Below are positions 2,484 through 63,575 of a DNA stretch of 64,000 nucleotides, piece after piece. Every line of letters starts with the position of its first letter. Positions within the stretch are counted from its first letter, which is position 1. Location: positions 1 to 64,000 of the IMG/VR virus record IMGVR_UViG_3300046005_000547; one strand, written 5' to 3'. The notes under the pieces were generated by a model, which saw only the letters and a list, made by a program, of their open reading frames with translations, was not told the origin of the DNA and did no database searches. The translations under genes and the position numbers were made by a program.

Positions 2484-2882
2484 CTAAAATAAAGATATTT
2501 TATTTTTATGTTCTAACCATTTATTACGTAATTCCCATAATACAGTTGCCTGACAATTGTTTCCTTCCTTACCAAATATATCAGACAACCCTGAATACTT
2601 TGTTAATTCGTCCAGTAGATAAGGATTCTCCTTGATATATTCAATCCATAAACTTCTATACAATTTTGTACATTCATCCATATTGACAATCTTATGATGT
2701 TTCTGATAAGATTTACATTCCTTTGGTTCTAAACCTGTTACTCCATCATCAAACACTTTAGATGCTTGGTAAATGTTCTCAATTGTATTATGTCTTGATT
2801 TAATGTAAGCAAAGAACGCCGAGAATCGTTTATTTCCTTTGGATGAACATTCCAAGAAGGGGTCTTCTCCGTGTCTAACCAT
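2484..2882 (-). CDS. conserved phage protein, possibly NADAR-like
   Basis: SSKGNKRFSAF...IENIYQASKVF motif; the family assignment is weak. Confidence 0.35.
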   Translation of the reverse strand: MVRHGEDPFLECSSKGNKRFSAFFAYIKSRHNTIENIYQASKVFDDGVTGLEPKECKSYQKHHKIVNMDECTKLYRSLWIEYIKENPYLLDELTKYSGLSDIFGKEGNNCQATVLWELRNKWLEHKNKISLF

Positions 2883-3177: not shown

Positions 3178-4656
3178 TTATAATGATTTGTTGACGAGTT
3201 GTCTAATTTCAGCCAACGTTGTTTCCTTGACCAATTTTCCATCTTTGAATACAACTTCTAAACATCCATGTTTTTCTTGTTTTGCATCAACGTCGTCATT
3301 CAATGTATATTGTCCATTTTCATGAGATACCATCAACAATCCTTTGGCAGATTTTTTGGTTCCATCAGAATCCGTTTTTGGGTCTTTGAAAATTGGTTTA
3401 CCAACTCCATTAACCTTGACGTATGTGGACTTAAACGCAATTCCGAAACTATCTCTTGAGACCATTCCGTAAGTGTACGATCCTACTCCAAATACAATAT
3501 TGTTGGACGCAAATCCTTTTTCCATCAATTTTCGTAGGATAGTGTCCTGACGTTCTAATGTAATTGAATCACCATAGATTGCTCCGATATGTGGGTCTAA
3601 TTCTTTATATCCTTTTGAATTAATTGTACCACCGAATGTTTCCCATAAACATTCAATCAATCCTTTTTGTTCTGGAGATCTACCATTCAATACAGAATAT
3701 GTTCCGCAGATAATATCAACAGGATCCCCCGAATCTGGGCGGATTGTAAGTTTCCCGTTACGATTCATGATTGTATCTTTTAATGCGGGTAGATACTCCG
3801 TAACTAATTGCCAGAAGTCCCACGAATCGGAAACCATTGAGAAGATTCCATCTGGATAAACATCTTCAATTAAATGACGGATTGATTCCAATTCATTTTC
3901 AACTCCGTAAGAAGTCTGGGTACTATGTTCCGAGGCGGGAACCGAGCAACCAACCAATTCTTCATCGATGTTTGCTCCATAATAATCTTCAGCCAATTCA
4001 ATAGCTGGTAATGTATCAGTACCAACAGAACCCATTGCCAATACAGCAAACCCAGATACAGCAGCAGATTGTCTATTCTGCATACCTCTCATACTAAAAT
4101 CATGATTCTGAAATGGAACAAACGAATTATCATTACATGTTAATTCTGAATACTTCAAACTGGTTTTCTTGAATTCCATGTAACGTGTTGCCGAAGCGAT
4201 TCCAAGCCACATTTCACAACTCAATACAGTTTCAATGTAATTAGTCAACCAGAAGAACTCTGGGATATTATTGATTACAGTCAACAAAGGAACTTTAAAA
4301 GGAACAAACGAACCCTCTGGTAATGCTTTGATTGTGATTGGCAAATATCCCAAATCATGTAATACTCCGATATGCGATACATCAACATCAGAATTCAACA
4401 TTTTATCAACAAATCGTTTGTATCGTTTTACGACTTGGTCTCTTGGTTTAGAAAAGAATGATGTATTCCATTCATCAATTAGATATTCCTTTACAAAATG
4501 TTGTAATCCAACAAAATAAACACCTTTACAATCTTTGATTCCTGAATGTTTACCAGAACGAGCGGTGAAGTTTGAATAAACGACTTCCGTACCTTGGATG
4601 TATTGTTTGATGTGTCCTAATTTATAAGCATCTGTTTGTAATAATGCGTTGTTCAT
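3178..4656 (-). CDS. nadV: nicotinamide phosphoribosyltransferase family (Nampt/NadV; Namat-like)
   Basis: TDAYKLGH, DFSMRG, SEHS, VSDSWD, IRPDSGDP, IYGDSIT, FGVGS motifs. Confidence 0.93.
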   Translation of the reverse strand: MNNALLQTDAYKLGHIKQYIQGTEVVYSNFTARSGKHSGIKDCKGVYFVGLQHFVKEYLIDEWNTSFFSKPRDQVVKRYKRFVDKMLNSDVDVSHIGVLHDLGYLPITIKALPEGSFVPFKVPLLTVINNIPEFFWLTNYIETVLSCEMWLGIASATRYMEFKKTSLKYSELTCNDNSFVPFQNHDFSMRGMQNRQSAAVSGFAVLAMGSVGTDTLPAIELAEDYYGANIDEELVGCSVPASEHSTQTSYGVENELESIRHLIEDVYPDGIFSMVSDSWDFWQLVTEYLPALKDTIMNRNGKLTIRPDSGDPVDIICGTYSVLNGRSPEQKGLIECLWETFGGTINSKGYKELDPHIGAIYGDSITLERQDTILRKLMEKGFASNNIVFGVGSYTYGMVSRDSFGIAFKSTYVKVNGVGKPIFKDPKTDSDGTKKSAKGLLMVSHENGQYTLNDDVDAKQEKHGCLEVVFKDGKLVKETTLAEIRQLVNKSL

Positions 4657-6687: not shown

Positions 6688-7542
6688 CTAATTAAAAATT
6701 TCAATAATATGCAATCTTTCATGGTTTGAATTTTCTATAAAAGAATTTGTCGTAATGATTTTACATATACCTGAATCTAAAATTGGAATGATTCCAATAT
6801 CAAAAATTCCATGAGTTACGTAAAGATATATTTTACCAACATTTCTTTGTGATAGAATTTTAGATATTTCGATAAAAGTTCTACCACCTGAACAGATGTC
6901 GTCTACAATCAATACGTCTTTACCATTGAAATCATCTCTATACACTTCTGTTCTGATGATATGACCGGACGAATCCCTTTCTTTATTTGCTTGGACAACA
7001 TCCAATGAAAGTTTAGATGCCAATTTGTAAATCTTTTTAGATGCACCAAAATCTGGCGATAATAACACTAGATTATCTAAATTGATTTTATCATCCAATT
7101 CATCAATACATTCAGAAGCAATTTGGTATTGTTCAATGTTGATAATGTTATCAAATAAAGCCAGAGATGTATCTGAATGTACATCAAATGTAACAATTCG
7201 ATTGTAATTTTGATTGTTGATTAAATCAGCAAACACTTTCAATGATAATGATTCGCCGTCGTCAGACACTTTATCTTGTCTAGCATACGGTAAATAAGGA
7301 GTGACCAATGTTAATGGTATCTTAGAACCATAATGTAATCTTAATGCGTTTGTTACCATCAACAATTCCATGATGTCATCAGATGATTTAAGTCTGGTCT
7401 GAATTTCAACTTCATATACATTTTTTGGAGTATTCTTCAATTGTACATGAACTTCTCCACCAGAGAATTTGAAGAAATTAACATCTTTCAATACTGCATT
7501 AGATGAATCATCTGTTAGAAAATTTAAACTTACGATACTCAT
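6688..7542 (-). CDS. prs: ribose-phosphate pyrophosphokinase family (Prs; Adps-like)
   Basis: FSGGEVHV, PYLPYARQD, FDVHS, SPDFGA, IVDDICSGGRT, VTHGIF. Confidence 0.92.
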   Translation of the reverse strand: MSIVSLNFLTDDSSNAVLKDVNFFKFSGGEVHVQLKNTPKNVYEVEIQTRLKSSDDIMELLMVTNALRLHYGSKIPLTLVTPYLPYARQDKVSDDGESLSLKVFADLINNQNYNRIVTFDVHSDTSLALFDNIINIEQYQIASECIDELDDKINLDNLVLLSPDFGASKKIYKLASKLSLDVVQANKERDSSGHIIRTEVYRDDFNGKDVLIVDDICSGGRTFIEISKILSQRNVGKIYLYVTHGIFDIGIIPILDSGICKIITTNSFIENSNHERLHIIEIFN

Positions 7543-7641: not shown

Positions 7642-8217
7642 TTAGATATAGATACCAAATTGATTAGCCAACGCTTTCAATCCACCAGAATATCCTTGAC
7701 CAACTGCTTTGAATTTCCATTCATTATTGTATCGATAAACTTCGCCAAAAATCATGGCAGTCTCAGACGACGCACCTTCCGTTAAATCATAACGTAAGAT
7801 TTCAACGCCAGTGTCTTGGTTAATCAATCGAATATACGCATTATTGACTTGACCGAAGTTCTGACGACGTTGTTCTGCTTCATGGATTGTAACAGTAATA
7901 CTAAATTTATCAACATCTTTATGTGCGAGATTCAATTTGATTACAATTTGTTCATCATCTCCGTCACCAGAACCCGTTAGATTATCGCCAAGATGTTCTG
8001 TTGAACCATCAACTGATTTCAATTGATTATAGAAGATAAAATCCGAGTCAGAACGCGTCTTACCATTTGTCAATAAGAAAGCCGACGCATCCAAATCAAA
8101 CGGAGCCCCATCAGTTGTTCTGGCATCCCAACCTAATCCAACAACGATATTGGTTAATGATGGATCGATTTTTGTTAAAGATAAGTTGTTACCTTTTGTT
8201 AATGTTAAAGATGTCAT
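7642..8217 (-). CDS. terD: TerD-family stress protein
   Basis: LGWD...FDLDASAF...FIFYNQ...[15 protein letters not shown]...WKFKAVGQG. Confidence 0.92.
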
Positions 8218-8226
8218 GATATATTC

Positions 8227-8964
8227 CTATAGATAAGATTTTGAAATTGTTGATACGATGTCGTTTAATGTTACATCGTTGGTTGAGTCACCGATTGCGT
8301 TGAATTTCCATTCATTGTTATGTTTATACAATTTACCAAGAATCATTGAAACTTTATTTTTAAATGTATCGTCTTTAGAGATGTTATAACCGGCAAGAAC
8401 GAAATCTACTCTAGACGGTGTTCCTTCATAGATTCTAATTGACGCAAAAGGAATGTCATTGAATTTTTGACCTCTGTAAGAATTCAATACAACAAAGATT
8501 TGGTCAACATCTGGTTTCAATTCGTTTAATTTAATTGAGATGATTTCATTATCTAATCCATCATCTCCGTTTGAATCACCAACTAAATCATCACCAGAAT
8601 GTGTAATTCCTTTACCTCTTAGATTACCAAAATAGATTAGTTCATCTTTCACTTTGTTTTTAAATGTAATACAACTTACATCTAAATCAACAGCTGTTCT
8701 TCCAATCATACCCCAATTCACGCCAACGCAGATATTGGTTAAAGATTTTCCATCTTTTTCTAATGTAATACGTTGTCCTTTAACCAATGTCAATTTTGGT
8801 TGAACTTGTTGTTTCTGTTTTTCCTGTAGAGCAGCTTTTGTTGCTTCAACAGATGTTTCAATGTTATCGATAACATTTCTAATTGTATTAAAAATACTCA
8901 TGTTCGGATTCTCCGGATTTAAAATTTTGATAAAACAGACGTCATGTTGAATGTAAATTCGCAT
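8227..8964 (-). CDS. TerD/TerZ-like protein with N-terminal coiled coil
   Basis: GVNWG, DLDVSC, GDDLVGDSNGDDGLDNEII, WKFNAIG; probable start at 8901 (MSIFN). Confidence 0.85.
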   Translation of the reverse strand: MRIYIQHDVCFIKILNPENPNMSIFNTIRNVIDNIETSVEATKAALQEKQKQQVQPKLTLVKGQRITLEKDGKSLTNICVGVNWGMIGRTAVDLDVSCITFKNKVKDELIYFGNLRGKGITHSGDDLVGDSNGDDGLDNEIISIKLNELKPDVDQIFVVLNSYRGQKFNDIPFASIRIYEGTPSRVDFVLAGYNISKDDTFKNKVSMILGKLYKHNNEWKFNAIGDSTNDVTLNDIVSTISKSYL

Positions 8965-46841: not shown

Positions 46842-49727
46842 ATGGATATTTTCGGAATTTCTATTAAAAAGAAATCCGATAAAATGAAGAGGGTGGATTC
46901 ATTTATTCCACCTTCTAATGATGATGGTTCTATTGTATCAACTTCTTCATTTTACGGATTATCATTAGATTTAGATGGAGCTGTAAAAGATGAAAATGAA
47001 TTAATTAGAAGATATAGACAAGCCGCAGAATATCCTGATTGTTCTAATGCCGTAGAGGAAATCGTTAATGAAGCAATTTCCGTTTCGTCTGATGATGCTC
47101 CTGTTACATTAAATCTTAATCATATCGAATCTTTATCTGAAAATGTAAAGAAAGCTATGGCAAAGGAATTCAGCATTATCTTGGATCTATTTGATTTTCA
47201 AGATAAAGGATACGATACATTCAGACAATGGTATATTGACGGTAAGGTTTATTTCCATGCCGTAGTTGACACTGAATCTCCAAAAAAAGGTATCCAGGAA
47301 TTAAGATATGTGGATCCAAGGAAGATTAGAAAAATCAAGGAAATGGTTGTTGAAAAGGATTCCCATGGTAACGATATTAAAAAGTCGGGTGAAACGTATT
47401 ACTTGTTTAATGATTCTGGTATCAATGCTGCAGCCAAATCTGGTGTTAAACTATCTTTAGAATCTGTTTTCTGCGCTACGTCTGGTATCGTTGATTATAA
47501 CACAGGAATGATTAGAAGCCATTTACATAATTCCATCAAAATTATCAATTCATTAAAATATACAGAAGAATCGCTGGTAATCTATAGAGTATCTAGAGCA
47601 CCTGAACGTAGAGTATTTTACATCGATGTAGGTAATTTAAATAAAGCTAAGGCAGACCAATATATCCAAGATACAATGGCTCGGTTTAGAAATAAATTAG
47701 TTTTCAACAGCACAACTGGTGAAATTAATGATAATAAACAGAACCAATCAATGATGGAAGACTATTGGTTACCTCGTAGAGATAATTCAAAAACAACTGA
47801 AATCACTACGTTACCAGGCGGATGTCTATCAATGGACACTAAAGTTTCATTATTAGATGGTAGAGAAATTACAATTTCTGAAATTGAACAAGAAATGAAA
47901 ACTGGTAAAGAACTTTGGGTTTATTCTTGCGATGAATTTACTGGTCAAATAAAACCTGGATTGATTACTTGGGCTGGAACGACGCAGAAATCTGCTAAAG
48001 TTATGAAAATAACATTAGATAATGGTGAATCTTTAATTTGTACACCAGACCATAAATTTCCAATTTATGGTAAAGGATTTGTTGAAGCGAAAGATTTAAT
48101 GATTGATGAATCGATGATACCATTATATCGGAAACACGAACAAATATCAAAAGCAAAAAAACGAGGATATGAACAATTTTTCGATAATCATAAAAAAGAA
48201 TGGGTATTCACTCATAGAATGGTTTGTGATGAATTGAAAGATAAGAAGATTTTCGATTATGTATATGATGAAGAATACAAAGATAGAACTAAAAATGTAA
48301 GACATCATATTGATTGTAATAGATTCAATAATAATCCAAACAATTTATGTTTTATGTCTTGGGATGACCATGCTAAACTTCATTCAGATTTATCGTTTAG
48401 TGAAGAAGCATACATGCTCGGAACTAGAGCTGCGGCGGAAAAACTTCGTATAATGAAAATTGAAGATCCAGATGCATATAAAAAACGTTCTGATGAAATT
48501 GGATTAAGAACCATGGAATGGCATGCTTCATTGAATGAAACGGAAAAACAAGAATTTATTGAATCTTTAAAAAAAGGTAATACTGAATATTGGGAAAATA
48601 TTTCTGAAGATTTGAGGGAACATAGAGCTAATGTATCTAGAACAAATGCATATTTGGGTATGTTATCGACTCAACACAAGTTACAAACAGATCCAATTTT
48701 TTATGAATTTTTTTGCGAACAAAATCGTAAATCTTGGGATGATGAACGTAGATTAAAATCCGCAAATATTACCAAAATAATTAGTACAGAACGATGGTTG
48801 TTGAGAGGTGACGAATTAAGAAAAAAACACAAAGAAAATCAAAAACTAGAAATTGATAATTTTATTTTCAAGAAAATAGTGGATTTAATCGCAAATAAAT
48901 CAACGTATAAAATTACATTAGAAGATGTAGTCAATTCATTAAATAATAATGAAGAATGCGTGTCTAGATTGATTGAATTGAACCAACATAAACATATTCC
49001 CAATTATGATGTGTTGGAAGGATTCACTAACAATAATGTTTCTAGATGTGTTAAAGATTATGGATATAAACATTGGATGGATTTTAGACAGAAATTCAAA
49101 TATCACAATCACAGAATTATTGATATTGAATATCTAGATGAAGAAATTGAAGTTGGTACATTAACTATCGACGGAGACGAATTATATCATAATCATCATA
49201 CATTTGCTTTGACTTGTGGAATTTTCACTAAAAATTCGAATTTGTCCGACATATCGGATGTAACTTACTTCCAGAATAAATTGTTTAGATCTCTTCATGT
49301 GCCTATTACAAGATTGATTCCTGAACAATCATTTTCTATTGGTAGAGCAGGTGAAATCACCAGAGATGAAATTAAATTCTCTAAATTCATCACTAGATTA
49401 CGTTCTAAATTTTCAAAAATCTTCATGGAAGCATTGAGATTACAATGTGTTCTGAAAGGAATTATATCTTATGAAGATTTCTCTACGATAGAAAAACAAA
49501 TTAGATTCAACTTTCATGATGATAATCATTTTGCTGAATTATCTGAATCTGAAGTCCTACAAAATAGATTAGCTACATTACAACTTGTTGATACATACGT
49601 TGGTAAATACTTCGATACAAATTGGGTCAAGAAAAATATATTGAAACAATCTGATGAAGAAATTCAAGAAATCCAAGAACGGATGGACGAAGAAAAACCA
49701 CTTATGGAACCAACCGAAGAAGAATAA
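46842..49727 (+). CDS. 20: portal gp20 containing an intein
   Basis: WYIDG, YRVSRAPERRVFYIDVGNL, EDYWLPRR, EITTLPGG; ~490 aa after removing the intein. Confidence 0.97.
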   Translation: MDIFGISIKKKSDKMKRVDSFIPPSNDDGSIVSTSSFYGLSLDLDGAVKDENELIRRYRQAAEYPDCSNAVEEIVNEAISVSSDDAPVTLNLNHIESLSENVKKAMAKEFSIILDLFDFQDKGYDTFRQWYIDGKVYFHAVVDTESPKKGIQELRYVDPRKIRKIKEMVVEKDSHGNDIKKSGETYYLFNDSGINAAAKSGVKLSLESVFCATSGIVDYNTGMIRSHLHNSIKIINSLKYTEESLVIYRVSRAPERRVFYIDVGNLNKAKADQYIQDTMARFRNKLVFNSTTGEINDNKQNQSMMEDYWLPRRDNSKTTEITTLPGGCLSMDTKVSLLDGREITISEIEQEMKTGKELWVYSCDEFTGQIKPGLITWAGTTQKSAKVMKITLDNGESLICTPDHKFPIYGKGFVEAKDLMIDESMIPLYRKHEQISKAKKRGYEQFFDNHKKEWVFTHRMVCDELKDKKIFDYVYDEEYKDRTKNVRHHIDCNRFNNNPNNLCFMSWDDHAKLHSDLSFSEEAYMLGTRAAAEKLRIMKIEDPDAYKKRSDEIGLRTMEWHASLNETEKQEFIESLKKGNTEYWENISEDLREHRANVSRTNAYLGMLSTQHKLQTDPIFYEFFCEQNRKSWDDERRLKSANITKIISTERWLLRGDELRKKHKENQKLEIDNFIFKKIVDLIANKSTYKITLEDVVNSLNNNEECVSRLIELNQHKHIPNYDVLEGFTNNNVSRCVKDYGYKHWMDFRQKFKYHNHRIIDIEYLDEEIEVGTLTIDGDELYHNHHTFALTCGIFTKNSNLSDISDVTYFQNKLFRSLHVPITRLIPEQSFSIGRAGEITRDEIKFSKFITRLRSKFSKIFMEALRLQCVLKGIISYEDFSTIEKQIRFNFHDDNHFAELSESEVLQNRLATLQLVDTYVGKYFDTNWVKKNILKQSDEEIQEIQERMDEEKPLMEPTEEE
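47823..49235 (+). mobile_element. 471-aa intein with HNH endonuclease
   Basis: starts CLSMDT, block B TPDH, ends FTKN followed by Ser; internal RHHIDCNRFNNNPNNL. Confidence 0.92.
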
Positions 49728-51957: not shown

Positions 51958-53274
51958 ATGACTACTCGTTCAGAATTAATTAAAAAATGGGCTCCAATTT
52001 TAGAACATGAAGGTTCTCCTAAAATTGCTGATAAAACCCGTCGCGAAGTTACTGCCCAATTATTAGAAAACCAAGAAAAATTCTTACAAGAAGCTGCTCC
52101 AGCTAACGGCGGTGGTGCTGGTATTGGTTTAGGCGGCGCTGGTGCGGCAACAGGTGGTGTTGCCGGTTACGATCCTATTCTTATCAGTTTAGTTCGTCGT
52201 GCGATGCCACAATTGATTGCATATGACATCTGTGGTGTTCAACCAATGAACCAACCTACTGGTTTGATTTTCGCAATGAAATCGCGTTATGCTACTCAAA
52301 ATGGTGCCGAAGCGTTATACAATGAAGCAAACACAGAAGCTTCTGGTAAATTAAACGCATTGTTTGATGGTACAGCAACTCCTGTTAATGGTAACCAAAC
52401 TGGCACAAACCCATTCGCTGCTGGTTATAACACTGGTGTTGGTATGTCTACTGCAGATAAAGAAGCATTGGGTAGTGCTGGTGCGGACCCTTATGGTGAA
52501 ATGGCATTCAGCATCGAAAAAACTTCTGTTGTCGCTAAATCTCGCGCATTAAAGGCAGAATACACAAACGAATTGGCACAAGATTTACAAGCTGTTCATG
52601 GTTTAGATGCTGAAGCAGAATTGATTAACATTTTGTCAACTGAAATTCTTGCTGAACAAAACCGTGAAATCATCCGTACTGTTTATTTGTCTGCTATGCC
52701 TGGTGCTGTTAATGGCACGGCAGTTGCTGGTACATTCGATTTAGACGTTGACTCTAATGGTCGTTGGTCTGTTGAAAAATTCAAAGGTTTGTTATTCCAA
52801 ATTGAACGCGAAGCAAACGCTATCGGTCACATGACACGTCGCGGTCGCGGTAACTTCATCATCTGTTCTGCTGACGTTGCTAGTGCATTGTCAATGGCTG
52901 GTGCTTTAGATTATGCTCCTGCGTTAAACACAAATTTGAATGTTGATGACACAAGTACAACTTTTGCTGGTGTATTGAATGGTCGTTATAAAGTATTCAT
53001 CGATCCATATTCAAGCAACATGAGTGACCAGCAGTATTTAGTTGTAGGTTACAAAGGTCAAAGTCAGATGGATGGAGGTCTCTACTTTTGTCCTTATATT
53101 CCCCTCGAATTGCGCCGCGCTGTAGATCCGAGCACATTCCAACCAAAAATTGGCTTCACAACTCGTTATGGTTTGGTTGCTAATCCATTTGCCGCAACTA
53201 ACGTTGGCGACAATGGTTTGTATGCCGGTTCAAATTGCTACTTCCGGAAGCTGAAGGTTACAAATATTATGTAG
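51958..53274 (+). CDS. 23: major capsid protein gp23
   Basis: KKWAPIL, LISLVRRAMP, GVQPMNQPTGLIFA, KSRALKAEY, FQPKIGF.TRYG. Confidence 0.98.
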   Translation: MTTRSELIKKWAPILEHEGSPKIADKTRREVTAQLLENQEKFLQEAAPANGGGAGIGLGGAGAATGGVAGYDPILISLVRRAMPQLIAYDICGVQPMNQPTGLIFAMKSRYATQNGAEALYNEANTEASGKLNALFDGTATPVNGNQTGTNPFAAGYNTGVGMSTADKEALGSAGADPYGEMAFSIEKTSVVAKSRALKAEYTNELAQDLQAVHGLDAEAELINILSTEILAEQNREIIRTVYLSAMPGAVNGTAVAGTFDLDVDSNGRWSVEKFKGLLFQIEREANAIGHMTRRGRGNFIICSADVASALSMAGALDYAPALNTNLNVDDTSTTFAGVLNGRYKVFIDPYSSNMSDQQYLVVGYKGQSQMDGGLYFCPYIPLELRRAVDPSTFQPKIGFTTRYGLVANPFAATNVGDNGLYAGSNCYFRKLKVTNIM

Positions 53275-53407: not shown

Positions 53408-54667
53408 ATGGAAATTTTAGACTTGTTATTATCAAAATCGTGTAATGTACATTATGTAAAACGATATTACAAATTTATAAATTATTGCAAAGAACAAAAT
53501 AAAAATTTAATTGACGAATATACAGAAACACACCACATTTTACCAAAAGCAGAAGATTTGTTTCCGGAGTATGAAAATTTAAAAGAATATCCTTGGAATT
53601 ATATAGAATTGACATTTAAACAACATTTAATCGCTCATGTTATTTTATGGAAATCTTATAAAGGATCCCAATCAATGGCATTAGAATGTATGTTGGGTAA
53701 TTTTAATTCAGAAACAAATTCATTATTATCTCATAGAAAAATACCAACTAAAACTAAATTACAATTTTTAGATAAAGTTAAAAAAGACGCAAACCTTAGA
53801 AGAAGTGTAGTCCAACAAGGATATGCAACATATAAAGATTCATCCGATAACAAATACTTCTTACATTATTCGGATCCAAAGATACAAGAATTGAATTTGG
53901 TTGGTAATAATACTGGATTATTACATTCCGAAGACACAAAATTAAAAATGTCTGAATCTAAATTGAAATATAGAATGGTTGAATTATTTTTCTTAGATAA
54001 TTCAGTTAATGTTAGATTGATGTCGCCAGAATATGTTGAATACCTTAATCAAGGATGGGTTGTTGGATTAACAGGAGAAGATAGAACATATCGAGATGGA
54101 TTGAAATATGAAAAGGTTTCTGCTTCAATGGAAAATAGATATGCATATTTGTACCCTAATGGAGATTATTATGGTTATATTAACATAGACGATCCTGTGA
54201 TTAAAGAAATAGGATTGATACAGAAACCAAAGACTGATAAACAGATGGAACAATATGAATCTATTTCAAGGATGGGTGCAGAATACAACAAAAATAAATG
54301 TGCATATAATAATGGAGAAATTGAACGTAATTATACTCCAGGAACTGAACCAGAAGGATGGGTTAAAGGGGGATTGACTAGAAAACCGTATGAGATTGTT
54401 GTAACTCAAAATGGTTCAACTATGTGGAATGATGGTGTTAAAAATTATAGAATAAAAGATGGAGAATTCCCTAAAGAAGGGTGGATTCGAGGTATAATAA
54501 CTAAAAAACGAGATAAACCTGTACATAATAAAAATAAGGTAAAGATTGTAAATATCAAAGATAAAACAGATTATAGATTTATCGTTTTGGATGAACATTA
54601 TGAATTACCAGAAGGTTATAAATTTTGTAATAATAAAAATATCTCTAGATTAAAGAAAAGTATATAA
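53408..54667 (+). mobile_element. HNH homing endonuclease
   Basis: YTETHHILPK...HLIAHVILWK; repeated NNG/NDG..PEGW DNA-binding modules. Confidence 0.85.
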
Positions 54668-60989: not shown

Positions 60990-61358
60990 ATGTTATCATT
61001 TTTAGAGTATTGGAAATTGATTGAGGGTGTTGATTTATCAATTCAATCGTTAAAGATGTCGTTAGAAAATCTTGGAGTTGCTGTCAATATATTCCAAAAG
61101 AATAACATCATTGAATTAACAAAAATTGTTGTTCCAAAAGAATCAAGAAATCAAGGTCTTGGTTCTAAAGCAATGAAACGTATAGTTGATTATGCAGATA
61201 ATTCCAAACAATTAATTGTATTGACTCCATCGGATGAGTTCGGCGGCAATGTCAACAAATTGATTAAATTTTATAAGAAGTTCGATTTTGTTGAAAACAA
61301 AGGTAAGAACAAAGACTTTGAAATCTCTGAATCAATGTACAGATTTCCAAAGAAATAA
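60990..61358 (+). CDS. GNAT acetyltransferase-like protein
   Basis: IVVPKESRNQGLGSKAM...LIKFYKKFDF. Confidence 0.85.
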   Translation: MLSFLEYWKLIEGVDLSIQSLKMSLENLGVAVNIFQKNNIIELTKIVVPKESRNQGLGSKAMKRIVDYADNSKQLIVLTPSDEFGGNVNKLIKFYKKFDFVENKGKNKDFEISESMYRFPKK

Positions 61359-61363
61359 CAAAA

Positions 61364-61400
61364 ATCCCATTAGATGTAAAATTCTAATGGGATTTTTATT
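61364..61400 (+). terminator. intrinsic terminator
   Basis: aatcccattag/ctaatgggatt stem followed by T-run. Confidence 0.75.
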
Positions 61401-61446: not shown

Positions 61447-62036
61447 ATCATCAATAACATTTTAGAGGTAAACAAAATGAAATCATTACAATTTTTCTCA
61501 GGTCATGATTCCTTTGGTAGACAAGTTCATGTATCTCAAGGCGAAAATCAATCATGGTATTACAGAATGTATGGATTTAATGGTTTCGGTAAAGGGTGGA
61601 GTAAATGGGAAATGTTAAAAGATTTCATCCCAACATTCAAAACAAAGATTGTCAATGTATATGATTCTTCGGAAACAGAAATTGAATATGGTGAATTATT
61701 GGAATGGGGATTTACATCTTTACATAAAATTGAAGATGTTAAAGTTAGACTACCAAATAACTAAGGAACAAAAATGAAGAAAGAACCCATTTTAATTTAC
61801 ATGATTTACGTTTCGTCTGTTGATGGTATTACAAACATTGCATCATTTTATAAGTTTCTGACATTCGAAGATCTAAGGGGAAATATCAGTTCGAAATATA
61901 TCACTGACGAAATTCTTAAATGTTTTGTTAACAATAATGGATACGCTAAATTCATGAATTGTGGAATAGAACAAAAATTAAAGATAGATAGAATGTTTTT
62001 AAATGACAATAGATTATAAATTTAAAGAGAGAATAA

Positions 62037-63575
62037 ATGATTATCGGAATTACAGGACCTGTCGCATCAGGCAAATCAAAAGCGATTCAGATGTTGAAAT
62101 CAAGAAATGATACTACAATATCAGCAACATATCACGATTTAGATGAATATTGTAAATCATTTAATGTTGACAAAGTATCGTTCTTCCAGAAACATTTTAA
62201 TGTAGATACTATGTCAAAAGAAAGAATCATTAAAGAAGTGTTTTCAGACATGAAATTGTACAATGAATATTGTCAATTATTTGAAGAAGATTTAATTGAT
62301 TTGTTGAATCAATTTACAAATGGTATCCATATAGTGGAAGCATCTGCGTTGTTTTCATATCCGAATCTCATTAAGAAATTCGATAAGATTATCTGTATAG
62401 ATCCAAAATCAAATCATAAAGAAAACAAATCAAAACGTAAGATTGATACAACAATTTTTGACGACATCTATTGGAGAAATTATACATGTAATTCTTTGAA
62501 GAATGATTTGAATGACATAAGATTGGAAACGGGAACGTTAATGGAATTACGTTCAAAAATTGAACAAGCAATTATTTCCATTGTCGATGAAGAATCGTGT
62601 ATCAATGAATTGTTCAATACAATAAATCGGTGGGAAACATTTAAAGATTTATCTCATGGATATTCAACTAATCCGTATCATAATCTTGACCATACTCGTT
62701 CTGTATTAACGGATTTGTACTATCAAGATAATTACACAAGAACATTAGGCGAATTGACATTGTATCATGATTTCCAATACGATCCAAAATTGATTTGTAA
62801 TGAAGATTTAGCTTCCAATTTCATCAAGTATCATTCGGATTTAATTCATGAAGATGTAGACATCGATCTTCTATGTCGTTTAATAAGATCGACTGATTAT
62901 AAAGTTATTGACCCAAAGATTTCCAACTTCTTCCTTTCGGATATCTCTCATTGGATTAGAACAGATGAAGAAATCATCGAAGTTGAACAATTAATGTTTA
63001 AAGAGTATCAACATATTGATTGGGTTGATTACAGAGCAGGAAGAATTAAAATTTTAAATGGATTGATAGATAAGATAATTTCAACATATCCTACAACAAT
63101 TTCGTGTTCTTATATCAGAGGAATTGAATTATCAATTTCATGGTTGAATACATTTAATCCAAAAATTGGTTGGTTCTGTGGTTCATTTAATCCATTTACA
63201 ATTGGTCATATGGATGTATTAACTAAAGCAGAACGATTATTCGATAAGGTTGTTCTTGTACAAGGAGTGAATCCAAACAAAGATTCAAGTCAATTTAATC
63301 TGAATTCAACTAAAACATTGGTGAAATATGAACAACATTTAGATGTTAAATGTATTCCTGATTTGATTCAATCTGTTGGGTATCAACCAATTTTGATTAG
63401 AGGGATTAGAAATGTACAAGATTACAATGAATCAAGCGAATGGCATCAACAAATTAAAGAGTTTGTGTATGTTGATATGGTTCTGATTGATTCAGATTTA
63501 AGACATATTAGTTCATCGTTTGTCAGAGGAGCTGGTAAATTAAATTTGGACACCAAACGATTTATTGTAAAATAA
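62037..63575 (+). CDS. CoaE-like kinase / HD domain / CoaD-like nucleotidyltransferase fusion
   Basis: IIGITGPVASGKS; YHNLDH...LYHD...NE; GSFNPFTIGH (HxGH), IRGIRN, HISSS. Confidence 0.8.
   Translation: MIIGITGPVASGKSKAIQMLKSRNDTTISATYHDLDEYCKSFNVDKVSFFQKHFNVDTMSKERIIKEVFSDMKLYNEYCQLFEEDLIDLLNQFTNGIHIVEASALFSYPNLIKKFDKIICIDPKSNHKENKSKRKIDTTIFDDIYWRNYTCNSLKNDLNDIRLETGTLMELRSKIEQAIISIVDEESCINELFNTINRWETFKDLSHGYSTNPYHNLDHTRSVLTDLYYQDNYTRTLGELTLYHDFQYDPKLICNEDLASNFIKYHSDLIHEDVDIDLLCRLIRSTDYKVIDPKISNFFLSDISHWIRTDEEIIEVEQLMFKEYQHIDWVDYRAGRIKILNGLIDKIISTYPTTISCSYIRGIELSISWLNTFNPKIGWFCGSFNPFTIGHMDVLTKAERLFDKVVLVQGVNPNKDSSQFNLNSTKTLVKYEQHLDVKCIPDLIQSVGYQPILIRGIRNVQDYNESSEWHQQIKEFVYVDMVLIDSDLRHISSSFVRGAGKLNLDTKRFIVK

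What the first reader, a model, noticed from the sequence alone, without database searches (positions are those of the whole stretch)
62037..63575. Triple fusion CoaE-like kinase - HD domain - CoaD-like adenylyltransferase under an early promoter
Seen: an N-terminal dephospho-CoA-kinase-like P-loop, a central HD phosphohydrolase-like domain and a C-terminal HxGH nucleotidyltransferase resembling PPAT. Established: CoaD then CoaE are the last two steps of CoA synthesis, fused as PPAT-DPCK in eukaryotic CoA synthase (opposite order). Inference: either a phage CoA synthase, which would fit the two phage GNATs needing acetyl-CoA, or the missing NMN adenylyltransferase for the NAD module. A phage-borne three-domain version seems unusual.
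Basis: partly seen in the sequence, partly recalled or inferred. Interest (0 to 1): 0.72.

Follow-up and report, generated by a model that had tools for sequence, protein, structure and literature searches.

The report
Phage kinase–HD–adenylyltransferase CoA synthase fusion
A freshwater jumbo phage carries one gene that fuses the enzymes for the last two steps of coenzyme A synthesis around an HD phosphoesterase domain of unknown role; the HD–adenylyltransferase core is common in phages and is the only CoaD-type gene found in many Bacteroidota, and only the added kinase is phage-specific.

Summary
The 512-aa ORF at 62037..63575(+) is real and has three domains. Residues 1-184 are a dephospho-CoA-kinase-like P-loop kinase. 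Residues 185-373 are an HD/PDE-fold phosphoesterase with an intact H...HD...D metal site. Residues 374-512 are a bacterial-type PPAT (CoaD) with every catalytic motif.

The "early promoter" is not supported. The NMNAT alternative is disfavoured. The CoA-synthase reading is supported.

- The HD-PPAT core is not rare: there are hundreds of clusters on viral contigs.
- The core is also chromosomal in Bacteroidota. In one order, 55 of 61 genomes carry only this divergent PPAT type and none also has a canonical CoaD, so this lineage most likely is a working PPAT.
- The N-terminal kinase occurs only on viral or metagenomic contigs. 22 of 23 such sequences form one clade.
- The HD catalytic core has been lost repeatedly, in bacterial short forms and in phage kinase-PPAT forms, so it is accessory. 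Its substrate is unknown.
- An AcpH-like role for the HD domain was tested and found no support.

Verdict: a new variant of a known kind, of moderate interest.

The parts
62037..63575 (+). Whole ORF, 512 aa, kinase-HD-PPAT fusion (stop codon at 63573..63575)
   Evidence: Full-length AF2 model has pLDDT 88 and pTM 0.87. About 20 full-length relatives at 32-46% identity.
62037..62588 (+). Dephospho-CoA-kinase-like P-loop kinase domain (aa 1-184)
   Evidence: Profile A3 hits solved DPCKs: 2GRJ E 5e-12, 2IF2 E 1e-11, E. coli 1VHL E 9e-7. Fold TM 0.63-0.68 to DPCK models. Invariant residues: G7, K13, S14, D36, E101, S103, R134.
62055..62078 (+). P-loop GPVASGKS (aa 7-14)
   Evidence: Invariant G7, K13 and S14 in A1 and A3. 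Aligned with the P-loop of solved DPCKs.
62136..62144 (+). D-L-D (aa 34-36), equivalent to the DPCK D-x-D substrate motif
   Evidence: D36 is invariant and D34 is at least 90% conserved. Aligned with D-A-D of 2IF2 and with the second Asp of 2GRJ.
62589..63155 (+). HD/PDE-fold phosphoesterase domain (aa 185-373)
   Evidence: Separate model pLDDT 92.8. VIA-align Z 12-12.8 to class-I PDEs over 183 of 189 residues, YedJ Z 10.2, YpgQ Z 9.3. Profile hit to 3B57 at E 7e-7. Atlas TM 0.66-0.72 to HD and PDEase clusters.
62676..62693 (+). Y-H-N-L-D-H (aa 214-219), first His motif of the HD domain
   Evidence: H215 and H219 are invariant in 70 sequences. From my own knowledge of those enzymes, this is the same YHNxxH spacing as in class-I PDEs.
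62766..62771 (+). H244-D245, the 'HD' metal-binding dyad
   Evidence: H244 is invariant and D245 is at least 90% conserved in 70 sequences.
62940..62942 (+). D302, the distal metal-binding Asp of the HD motif
   Evidence: Invariant in 70 sequences.
63156..63572 (+). Phosphopantetheine adenylyltransferase (CoaD-type) domain (aa 374-512)
   Evidence: TIGR01510 E 3e-16. Solved PPATs E 1e-19. Foldseek: the top 50 PDB hits shown are all PPAT, TM 0.73.
63180..63209 (+). GSFNPFTIGH (aa 382-391), the HxGH nucleotidyltransferase signature
   Evidence: G382, F384, P386 and G390 are invariant; H391 is at least 90% conserved. Aligned with GTFDPITNGH of E. coli PPAT.
63270..63281 (+). N-P-N-K (aa 412-415); K415 is equivalent to Lys42 of E. 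coli PPAT
   Evidence: N412 and K415 are invariant; P413 is at least 90% conserved. Aligned with S-P-S-K of E. coli PPAT.
63399..63422 (+). R-G-I-R-N-V-Q-D (aa 455-462), equivalent to R88, R91 and D95 of E. coli PPAT
   Evidence: G456, R458 and D462 are invariant; R455 is at least 90% conserved. Alignment.
63507..63527 (+). I-S-S-S-F-V-R (aa 491-497), the ATP phosphate-binding motif
   Evidence: S493 and R497 are invariant; S492 and S494 are at least 90% conserved. Aligned with ISSSLVK of E. coli PPAT.
62024..62033 (+). Purine-rich ribosome-binding-like stretch in the 17-nt gap after the upstream ORF
   Evidence: Read directly from the sequence. The short gap suggests co-transcription with 61477..61764 and 61774..62019.
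61357..61400 (.). 18-bp hairpin after the GNAT gene; a possible boundary of the transcription unit that contains the fusion gene
   Evidence: sequence.

Best explanation
The gene encodes a bifunctional enzyme for the last two steps of CoA synthesis, carrying an accessory HD phosphoesterase.

The C-terminal domain takes 4'-phosphopantetheine and ATP and makes dephospho-CoA plus pyrophosphate (the PPAT/CoaD reaction). The N-terminal P-loop kinase then phosphorylates the 3'-hydroxyl of dephospho-CoA to give CoA (the DPCK/CoaE reaction).

The phage encodes no earlier pathway step that I could detect. It therefore draws on the host's 4'-phosphopantetheine and adds its own capacity at the end of the pathway.

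The middle HD domain came with the PPAT domain from an older two-domain HD-PPAT enzyme. That enzyme is widespread in large phages and serves as the only detectable CoaD in many Bacteroidota. The HD domain keeps a complete metal site and a phosphodiesterase-like fold, so it is probably catalytically active on some phosphoester. It is accessory rather than required for PPAT activity, and its substrate is not known.

Shown: the domain identities, motif conservation, distribution, mutual exclusivity with canonical CoaD, and the single origin of the kinase fusion.
Inferred: the actual substrates, that both end domains are active in this phage protein, and why the phage benefits.
For: PPAT domain:
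- TIGR01510 E 3e-16 over nearly the whole model.
- Solved PPATs at E 1e-19, with the HxGH, NPxK (Lys42), RGxR..D and ISSSxxR motifs aligned and conserved.
- The 50 best PDB fold hits shown are all PPAT, TM 0.73.

Functional inference for this PPAT lineage:
- In 4 of 5 Bacteroidota genomes the HD-PPAT fusion is the only credible CoaD, while a canonical CoaE is present.
- In 61 genomes of that order, 60 have exactly one CoaD-type gene: 5 canonical and 55 of this divergent type. None has both.
- The bacterial copies sit in conserved housekeeping synteny.

Kinase:
- Among kinases, only DPCKs score at E below 1e-3 in the PDB sequence search; the best other kinase (uridine kinase) is at 1.8e-3. DPCKs reach E 5e-12.
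- The P-loop, the D-x-D motif and Arg134 are conserved and aligned.
- The fold is DPCK-like.
- A relative without the HD domain (P0021) passes Pfam's CoaE threshold.

Accessory nature of the HD domain:
- Bacterial short forms of 200-211 aa keep only the last two HD helices.
- Phage kinase-PPAT forms lack the HD domain altogether.
- P0018 has lost the HD histidines but keeps the PPAT motifs.

The phage has no other HxGH transferase, and no CoaE, CoaB/C, type III PanK or ACP was detected.

coaD and coaE have been reported as abundant viral auxiliary genes (PMC11097641).
Against: - No enzymology exists for any member of the family.
- The window protein itself is below the curated thresholds for TIGR01510 (59.6 against 103.3 bits) and Pfam CoaE (13.6 against 27 bits).
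- The kinase differs from canonical DPCK in the segment that normally lines the CoA site (EASAL in place of the usual P-L-L-x-E; the latter is from my own knowledge).
- The argument from bacterial essentiality applies to sequences only ~30% identical to the phage protein.
- A conserved, apparently active HD site has no place in the simple two-step scheme.
- The benefit to the phage is conjecture.
Confidence: 0.65

Rival explanations
1. Salvage-coupled CoA synthase. The HD domain is a phosphodiesterase that releases 4'-phosphopantetheine from a phosphodiester-linked donor, such as holo-acyl carrier protein as AcpH does, and hands it to PPAT and then DPCK. The three domains would then form one salvage line from donor to CoA.
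For: - The HD fold is closest to true phosphodiesterases (class-I PDEs, Z 12-12.8) and carries their YHNxxH motif.
- The persistent fusion to PPAT in hundreds of clusters suggests a coupled function.
- AcpH is a known HD-family enzyme that yields the PPAT substrate (my own knowledge).
Against: - No sequence match to the AcpH family: PF04336 has no hit even at E 10, and it is not among the families hit by 70 relatives.
- AcpH is absent from the Swiss-Prot fold hits.
- The native-pair complex prediction with AcpP gave no answer.
- The HD core was lost in many lineages that keep PPAT.
Confidence: 0.1
2. NAD-related enzyme. The C-terminal domain is the phage's NMN adenylyltransferase, completing the NAMPT module, possibly with the kinase acting on the NAD adenosine ribose.
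For: - This ORF is the only HxGH transferase in a genome that has a NAMPT-family gene and no Nudix-NMNAT.
- PHROG and NCBIfam NMNAT models give weak hits.
Against: - Those hits cover only the shared HxGH motif (~40 residues, E 3e-5 or worse), against a full-length CoaD match at 3e-16.
- All the top fold hits are PPAT.
- The NPxK lysine typical of PPAT is invariant.
- NAMPT-like plus PRPS-like is the NARP1 composition, which needs no NMNAT.
- Relative L002 has an NMNAT-Nudix gene directly downstream.
- The same PPAT lineage is the sole CoaD candidate in bacteria that also have a separate NadD-sized ORF.
Confidence: 0.04
3. Nucleic-acid end-processing or immune-signal enzyme. A kinase-phosphoesterase-adenylyltransferase triad resembles bacterial Pnkp-type RNA repair enzymes. 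Alternatively, the PDE-like HD domain could degrade cyclic-nucleotide defence signals, with the other domains serving a role unrelated to CoA.
For: - The domain order kinase / metal phosphoesterase / adenylyltransferase mirrors Pnkp (my own knowledge).
- The HD fold is closest to cyclic-nucleotide PDEs.
- One relative is followed by an RlaP-family gene.
- The phage invests heavily in counter-defence metabolism: NADAR and a NARP1-like pair.
Against: - The kinase profile finds DPCKs, and no polynucleotide kinase is among the hits at E 0.01 or better.
- The transferase is of the HxGH small-molecule class, not a ligase-type lysine adenylyltransferase.
- The bacterial HD-PPAT sits in housekeeping synteny as the only CoaD candidate.
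- There are no conserved RNA-repair or defence neighbours in 45 phage loci.
Confidence: 0.05
4. Partly decayed fusion. Only one or two of the three domains are still catalytic in this phage; for example, the kinase may be just an ATP-binding or regulatory module.
For: - Some relatives are visibly decaying. P0014 has lost the HD histidines, and the second His of its HxGH motif is Gln. P0018 has lost the HD histidines.
- The window protein's kinase is weak against Pfam CoaE.
Against: In the window protein itself, every catalytic motif of all three domains is intact and matches the family-invariant positions. The model is confident throughout.
Confidence: 0.1

Closest known systems
Bacterial phosphopantetheine adenylyltransferase CoaD (TIGR01510; e.g. 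E. coli PPAT, PDB 1B6T/1QJC)
   Same: Same fold (TM 0.73). Same HxGH, Lys42-equivalent, RGxR..D and ISSSxxR motifs. Presumably the same reaction.
   Different: About 25% identity and below the curated equivalog score. Carries a ~190-aa N-terminal HD domain, and here also a kinase. The canonical enzyme is a stand-alone ~160-aa hexamer; the oligomeric state of this protein is unknown.
Bacterial dephospho-CoA kinase CoaE (PF01121; PDB 2IF2, 2GRJ, 1VHL)
   Same: P-loop kinase fold, with the P-loop, D-x-D motif and lid arginine aligned.
   Different: Very divergent: the single sequence is below Pfam's threshold. It is fused at the N-terminus of another enzyme, and the segment after strand 3 differs (EASAL).
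Eukaryotic bifunctional CoA synthase (COASY, PPAT-DPCK)
   Same: One polypeptide carries both terminal activities of the CoA pathway.
   Different: Opposite domain order (kinase first), a bacterial-type PPAT, and an extra HD domain between the two. It arose independently; the kinase was added within a phage HD-PPAT lineage.
Two-domain HD-PPAT proteins of Bacteroidota and large phages (uncharacterised; labelled 'pantetheine-phosphate adenylyltransferase' by automatic annotation)
   Same: Homologous over aa ~205-510 at ~30% identity, with the same HD and PPAT motifs.
   Different: They lack the N-terminal kinase. The bacterial copies are chromosomal, syntenic and the sole CoaD candidate.
HD-superfamily hydrolases of unknown function (Lin1889/3B57, E. 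coli YedJ/3GW7, 3DJB) and class-I cyclic-nucleotide phosphodiesterases
   Same: H...HD...D metal site, the YHNxxH motif and an all-helical fold.
   Different: No close relative has a known substrate. About 10-17% identity to the PDEs. Much smaller than a PDE catalytic domain (189 against ~320 residues).
AcpH, acyl carrier protein phosphodiesterase (PF04336)
   Same: An HD-family enzyme whose product is the PPAT substrate. This makes it a functional analogy worth testing.
   Different: No detectable sequence or fold-search relationship. ACP binding was not predicted (no answer).

Membership tests
PPAT / CoaD (TIGR01510, PF01467) | HxGH nucleotidyltransferase motif near the N-terminus of the domain | tested here: met
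   GSFNPFTIGH at aa 382-391, conserved in the family and aligned with E. coli GTFDPITNGH.
PPAT / CoaD (TIGR01510, PF01467) | Phosphate and substrate-binding residues equivalent to Lys42, Arg88, Arg91, Asp95 and the ISSSxxR motif | tested here: met
   K415, R455, R458, D462 and ISSSFVR (aa 491-497) are invariant or nearly so, and align with E. coli PPAT.
PPAT / CoaD (TIGR01510, PF01467) | Score above the curated family threshold | tested here: inconclusive
   PF01467: 35.7 bits against a cut-off of 21, passed. TIGR01510 equivalog: 59.6 bits against 103.3, not passed, although the match covers positions 3-143 of 155.
PPAT / CoaD (TIGR01510, PF01467) | PPAT three-dimensional fold | tested here: met
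   Foldseek: the top 50 PDB hits shown are all PPAT, TM 0.73, rmsd 2.6 A.
PPAT / CoaD (TIGR01510, PF01467) | Fills the CoaD role in a genome (sole PPAT where the pathway exists) | tested here: met
   Met for the bacterial relatives only. 55 of 61 genomes of one Bacteroidota order have only this type, 5 have only the canonical type and none has both. CoaE was found in all 4 fusion-only genomes checked.
PPAT / CoaD (TIGR01510, PF01467) | Catalyses 4'-phosphopantetheine + ATP -> dephospho-CoA + PPi | not testable with these tools
   Needs an enzyme assay or complementation.
DPCK / CoaE (PF01121, TIGR00152) | P-loop GxxxxGK[ST] at the N-terminus | tested here: met
   GPVASGKS at aa 7-14; G7, K13 and S14 are invariant.
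DPCK / CoaD-partner kinase (PF01121, TIGR00152) | D-x-D motif after strand 2 and the lid arginine | tested here: met
   D34-L35-D36 aligns with D-A-D of 2IF2. R134 aligns with the lid Arg of 2IF2.
DPCK / CoaE (PF01121, TIGR00152) | Score above the curated family threshold | tested here: not met
   Window protein: PF01121 13.6 bits against 27, and TIGR00152 15.5 against 65.55. The family profile does reach solved DPCKs at E 5e-12, and relative P0021 passes Pfam (28.7 bits).
DPCK / CoaE (PF01121, TIGR00152) | DPCK fold | tested here: met
   AFDB cluster hits named dephospho-CoA kinase over aa 1-188, TM 0.56-0.68 normalised by the hit.
HD superfamily (PF01966) | H...HD...D metal-binding residues | tested here: met
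   H215, H219, H244 and D302 are invariant and D245 is at least 90% conserved in 70 sequences.
HD superfamily (PF01966) | Score above Pfam's threshold | tested here: not met
   No hit for the window's own domain. 27 of 70 relatives hit at E 0.1 or better, and P0039 passes (24.7 against 22 bits).
HD superfamily (PF01966) | All-helical HD/PDE fold | tested here: met
   Z 12.8 to PDE7A over 183 of 189 residues, YedJ Z 10.2, YpgQ Z 9.3. Atlas TM 0.66-0.72.
AcpH (PF04336) | Sequence or fold membership | tested here: not met
   No PF04336 match in the phage genome at E up to 10. Not among the families hit by 70 relatives. Absent from the Swiss-Prot fold hits.
AcpH (PF04336) | Binds holo-ACP | tested here: inconclusive
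   Native Bacteroidia HD-PPAT plus its own AcpP: score 0.00, verdict 'no answer'.
Eukaryotic CoA synthase (COASY) | Domain order PPAT then DPCK, with the two contiguous | tested here: not met
   The order here is kinase - HD - PPAT.
NMN/NaMN adenylyltransferase (NadD, NadM, NadR) | Match to an NMNAT model beyond the shared HxGH motif | tested here: not met
   All NMNAT and NadD hits end by about aa 430 and cover no more than ~55 model positions, at E 2.9e-5 or worse.

The most novel reading that the evidence does not exclude
The HD domain is a new kind of phosphopantetheine-releasing phosphodiesterase, acting on holo-carrier proteins or another conjugate. The three-domain phage enzyme would then strip the prosthetic group from host carrier proteins and convert it in one polypeptide into CoA, shutting down host fatty-acid synthesis while enlarging the CoA pool. 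The two-domain bacterial enzyme would be the housekeeping recycling version of the same line.
Probability: 0.1. Interest if true: 0.8.

Novelty: new variant of a known kind. Interest (0 to 1): 0.5.

Why it matters
Three points would matter if confirmed.

1. It would be a prokaryotic-virus counterpart of the eukaryotic bifunctional CoA synthase, built independently and in the reverse domain order. It would show that large phages supply their own capacity for the last, regulated steps of CoA synthesis, rather than only nucleotides and NAD.

2. The by-product result may be of wider use. A whole Bacteroidota order appears to run CoA synthesis on a divergent PPAT that is fused, or was once fused, to an HD phosphoesterase, and lacks the canonical CoaD. 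Automatic annotation masks this, and I found no paper on it.

3. The HD domain is a conserved, apparently active enzyme physically tied to PPAT in hundreds of lineages, with no known substrate. That is a concrete, assayable gap in a pathway regarded as fully known.

Tried and rejected
- blastn of the gene against GenBank phages found no match.
- T4-type late promoter TATAAATA: I saw TATAAATT upstream, but the consensus has 0 matches in the window against 12 expected, so this was rejected.
- A compact TGACA-N6/7-TATAA motif lies upstream of this ORF and of ORF 61477. It is not enriched (4 against 3 expected).
- Bacteroidota-type promoter TTTG...TAnnTTTG, tried as a host clue: 8 against 4.3 expected, not significant.
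- AcpH membership of the HD domain was rejected at the sequence and fold-search level.
- The ACP complex prediction returned no answer and is not used as evidence.
- A search for conserved neighbours around 45 phage copies (other CoA genes, ACP, PPTase, GNAT) found nothing recurrent.
- Foldseek of the isolated HD model against PDB and Swiss-Prot gave only weak PDE hits (E ~0.03-0.1). The VIA-align run was needed to get clear scores.
It was rerun with A1, so the cellular survey only sees sequences close to the A1 motifs.
- Literature searches for a phage CoA synthase, an HD-PPAT fusion or CoA-targeting defence found nothing specific.
- No RNA run holding the gene was listed; kind 'any' is not an RNA search. 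Read laying was therefore not used, and nothing is known about when the gene is expressed.
Full report
OBSERVATION

The window is the first 64 kb of a complete 234,735-bp virus record with direct terminal repeats. GC content is about 30%. The phage is T4-like: tail sheath, portal, scaffold, major head protein, tail tube and UvsY all lie on the + strand arm from ~43.9 kb onwards. The gene occurs in lake-water and freshwater metagenomes.

At exactly 62037..63575(+) there is one open ATG frame of 512 aa. The ORF is real and conserved. About 20 full-length relatives at 32-46% identity exist in metagenomes, and an identical copy lies on a second IMG/VR contig.

THREE DOMAINS

PPAT domain (aa 374-512)
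- Pfam CTP_transf_like passes its cut-off, and TIGR01510 (coaD) matches positions 3-143 of 155 at E 3e-16.
- A profile of the family hits solved PPATs at E 1e-19. GSFNPFTIGH, FDKVV, NPNK, LIRGIR..D and HISSSFVR align with the E. coli HxGH, Lys42, Arg88/Arg91/Asp95 and ISSS motifs.
- The AF2 model is confident (pLDDT 88, pTM 0.87). Its 50 best PDB matches shown are all PPAT (TM 0.73, rmsd 2.6 A).

Kinase domain (aa 1-184)
- Alone it is only weakly CoaE-like (E 0.05 and 0.011).
- The family profile finds solved dephospho-CoA kinases (2GRJ E 5e-12, 2IF2 E 1e-11, E. coli CoaE E 9e-7). Among kinases nothing else scores better than E 1e-3; the next best, a uridine kinase, is at 1.8e-3.
- The P-loop (aa 7-14), D-L-D (aa 34-36) and Arg134 align with the DPCK P-loop, D-x-D and lid arginine.
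- The fold agrees (TM 0.63-0.68).

Middle domain (aa 185-373)
- The window sequence has no Pfam hit of its own.
- In 70 aligned relatives H215, H219, H244 and D302 are invariant and D245 is nearly so. This is the H...HD...D metal site.
- The profile reaches solved HD hydrolases of unknown function (3B57 E 7e-7, YedJ, 3DJB). 27 of 70 relatives hit Pfam HD.
- A separate model (pLDDT 92.8) aligns with class-I cyclic-nucleotide PDE catalytic domains at Z 12-12.8 over 183 of 189 residues, then YedJ (Z 10.2), YpgQ (Z 9.3) and small alarmone hydrolases (Z 8-9). The Atlas search agrees.

PROMOTER CLAIM

This claim is not supported.
- The gap to the upstream ORF is 17 nt and contains only a purine-rich RBS-like stretch.
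- The sigma-70 scan finds nothing upstream and no excess over shuffles (20 against 21.8).
- Three motif ideas failed their enrichment tests.
- A hairpin after the GNAT gene (61357..61400) probably marks the start of a unit of three ORFs that ends with this gene.
- The timing of expression is unknown.

WHERE THE ARCHITECTURE OCCURS

The exhaustive search gave 1880 hits (535 at E<=1e-10). Only ~15 clusters are three-domain. Most of the 150 best hits are 310-370-aa proteins that align with query residues ~205-510, that is HD plus PPAT.

A census by domain HMMs over everything fetched:

| Source | Kinase-HD-PPAT | Kinase-PPAT | HD-PPAT | PPAT alone |
|---|---|---|---|---|
| Metagenome proteins | 22 | 6 | 136 | not counted |
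| IMG/VR loci | 8 | 1 | 36 | 40 |
| Cellular loci | 0 | 0 | 38 | 2 |

- IMG/VR holds 182 confirmed relatives, many on contigs of 100-675 kb.
- Among cultured phages the pieces occur separately: a 162-aa PPAT in Caulobacter and Brevundimonas jumbo phages, and stand-alone HD proteins in Rhodococcus and Rhizobium phages. The fusion appears only in uncultured huge phages.
- The 40 cellular loci are mostly Bacteroidota MAGs, with a few labelled Akkermansia, Victivallales, Mycoplasmataceae or unclassified. They include an isolate (Mucilaginibacter angelicae) and a closed 3.7-Mb chromosome. None has the kinase.
- The cellular copies have conserved housekeeping synteny: an M16 peptidase upstream in 34 of 35 loci and a ~620-aa protein downstream in 30 of 35, with YajC, an NMO/FabK-family protein and an E1-beta-like protein nearby.

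THE KEY FUNCTIONAL INFERENCE

- In four of five such genomes the HD-PPAT fusion is the only credible CoaD (84-86 bits). The other hits are ~193-aa NadD-sized frames that match only the HxGH end. A canonical CoaE is present in all four.
- Across 61 genomes of that order, 60 have exactly one CoaD-type gene at E<=1e-10. Five are canonical (158-163 aa, 160-169 bits). Fifty-five are of the divergent type (80-101 bits), in frames of ~315-380 aa or ~200-226 aa, plus one outlier of 948 aa. No genome has both.
- Because PPAT is an indispensable pathway step (established knowledge), this either/or pattern argues that the divergent lineage is a working PPAT.
- The ~200-aa forms keep only the last two helices of the HD domain in the same synteny. 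Together with the phage kinase-PPAT forms, and with P0018 (HD histidines lost, PPAT motifs intact), this shows the HD catalytic core is dispensable for the PPAT role.

EVOLUTION

I built a maximum-likelihood tree of the HD+PPAT region (137 rows; every third metagenomic HD-PPAT protein was kept and identical sequences were merged).
- 22 of 23 three-domain sequences fall in one clade (SH-aLRT 98). The 23rd (L033) sits on a long branch elsewhere and is unreliable.
- 33 bacterial copies form a tight, short-branched clade (support 99) nested among long-branched viral and metagenomic sequences.
- The root is a midpoint only, so the direction of transfer between phages and Bacteroidota is not resolved.
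- The kinase was essentially added once, within a lineage seen only on viral or metagenomic contigs.

MECHANISM

I commit to a two-step CoA synthase, PPAT then DPCK, acting on host 4'-phosphopantetheine.
- The phage has no second HxGH enzyme, and no separate CoaE, CoaB/C, type III PanK, ACP or Nudix was detected.
- The HD domain is probably an active metal-dependent phosphoesterase. Its fold and YHNxxH motif point to phosphodiesterase-type chemistry. Its substrate is unknown.
- I tested the most specific idea, AcpH-like release of phosphopantetheine from holo-ACP. There is no AcpH sequence or fold relationship. A native-pair complex prediction returned no answer.
- Other possibilities that I could not test are removal of pyrophosphate to pull the reversible PPAT reaction, or clearance of damaged phosphopantetheine by analogy with the phosphatase domain fused to eukaryotic PANK4 (my own knowledge).
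- Phage loci offer no contextual help: no neighbouring family recurs in more than 4 of 45 loci.

THE NMNAT ALTERNATIVE

This reading is disfavoured.
- NMNAT models match only the HxGH end.
- The phage's NAD genes are NAMPT-like plus PRPS-like. That matches the published NARP1 pair, Namat and Adps, which rebuilds NAD from ADP-ribose and nicotinamide without an NMNAT. I did not verify that the window's pair really is Adps/Namat.
- In relative L002 a dedicated NMNAT-Nudix gene lies directly downstream of the three-domain gene.

NOVELTY

- coaD and coaE are already listed as viral auxiliary genes in viromes (PMC11097641). Eukaryotes have a PPAT-DPCK fusion.
- What is new here is the reversed order with an HD domain between the two, the restriction of this form to phages, and the uncharacterised HD-PPAT core.
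- I found no paper on any of these forms.
- I rate it a new variant of a known kind, of moderate interest. The open question with real upside is what the HD domain does.

CAVEATS

- All functional statements are inferences from homology and comparative genomics.
- The cellular survey used motif patterns derived from the phage family and will miss divergent copies.
- The bacterial argument concerns proteins only ~30% identical to the phage protein.
- The host of this phage is unknown.

Noticed in passing
L090-L124, L130-L142 (Bacteroidota genomes G001-G062): One whole Bacteroidota order appears to lack the canonical CoaD. 55 of 61 genomes carry a single divergent PPAT, either fused to an HD domain (~320 aa) or as a ~200-aa short form that keeps only the last two HD helices. 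5 genomes carry a canonical CoaD, and none carries both.
   Followed up: yes
window 2484..2882(-), 3178..4656(-), 6688..7542(-): NAD counter-defence cluster: a NADAR-family protein, a NAMPT-family protein and a PRPS-like protein. This composition matches the published NARP1 pair (Namat and Adps). There is no Nudix or NMNAT anywhere in the genome. I did not verify that the pair is truly Adps/Namat rather than Prs/NAMPT.
   Followed up: partly
window 7642..8217(-) and 8227..8964(-): Two adjacent TerD-domain genes (E 2.5e-78 and 6e-34) lie next to the NAD cluster.
   Followed up: no
window 46842..49727(+): The portal protein ORF is 961 aa. Its N-terminal part (aa 2-327) matches the portal family, and HNH-endonuclease matches fall at about aa 433-570. 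This looks like an intein or an in-frame homing-endonuclease insertion.
   Followed up: no
window 53408..54667(+): A homing or HNH endonuclease gene lies directly downstream of the major head protein gene (51958..53274).
   Followed up: no
whole window: The T4 late-promoter consensus TATAAATA is completely absent (0 matches against 12 +/- 3.7 expected from shuffles), although the phage is T4-like in its structural genes. Late transcription must use another signal.
   Followed up: partly
L002:9664..10692: In a 450-kb relative, the three-domain gene is preceded by ribonucleotide reductase and glutaredoxin genes and followed directly by an NMNAT-Nudix (NadM-type) gene.
   Followed up: partly
P0014, P0018 (alignment A1): Two three-domain relatives are decaying. 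P0014 has lost the HD histidines and has Gln in place of the second His of HxGH. P0018 has lost the HD histidines only. P0021 and P0022 are kinase-PPAT fusions with no HD domain at all.
   Followed up: partly
window 60990..61358(+): A small GNAT acetyltransferase (122 aa) lies ~700 nt upstream on the same strand, followed by an 18-bp hairpin. Its closeness to the CoA gene is not conserved in relatives.
   Followed up: partly
L001:9017..9961: In a 364-kb phage contig, the HD-PPAT gene overlaps by 4 nt with a downstream RlaP-family (PF10127) nucleotidyltransferase gene.
   Followed up: no
Atlas structural hits to aa 185-372: The structurally most similar HD domains in Bacteroidota are fused to class III adenylate/guanylate cyclases or to YitT membrane proteins. 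This hints that this HD subtype may act on cyclic nucleotides in other contexts.
   Followed up: no
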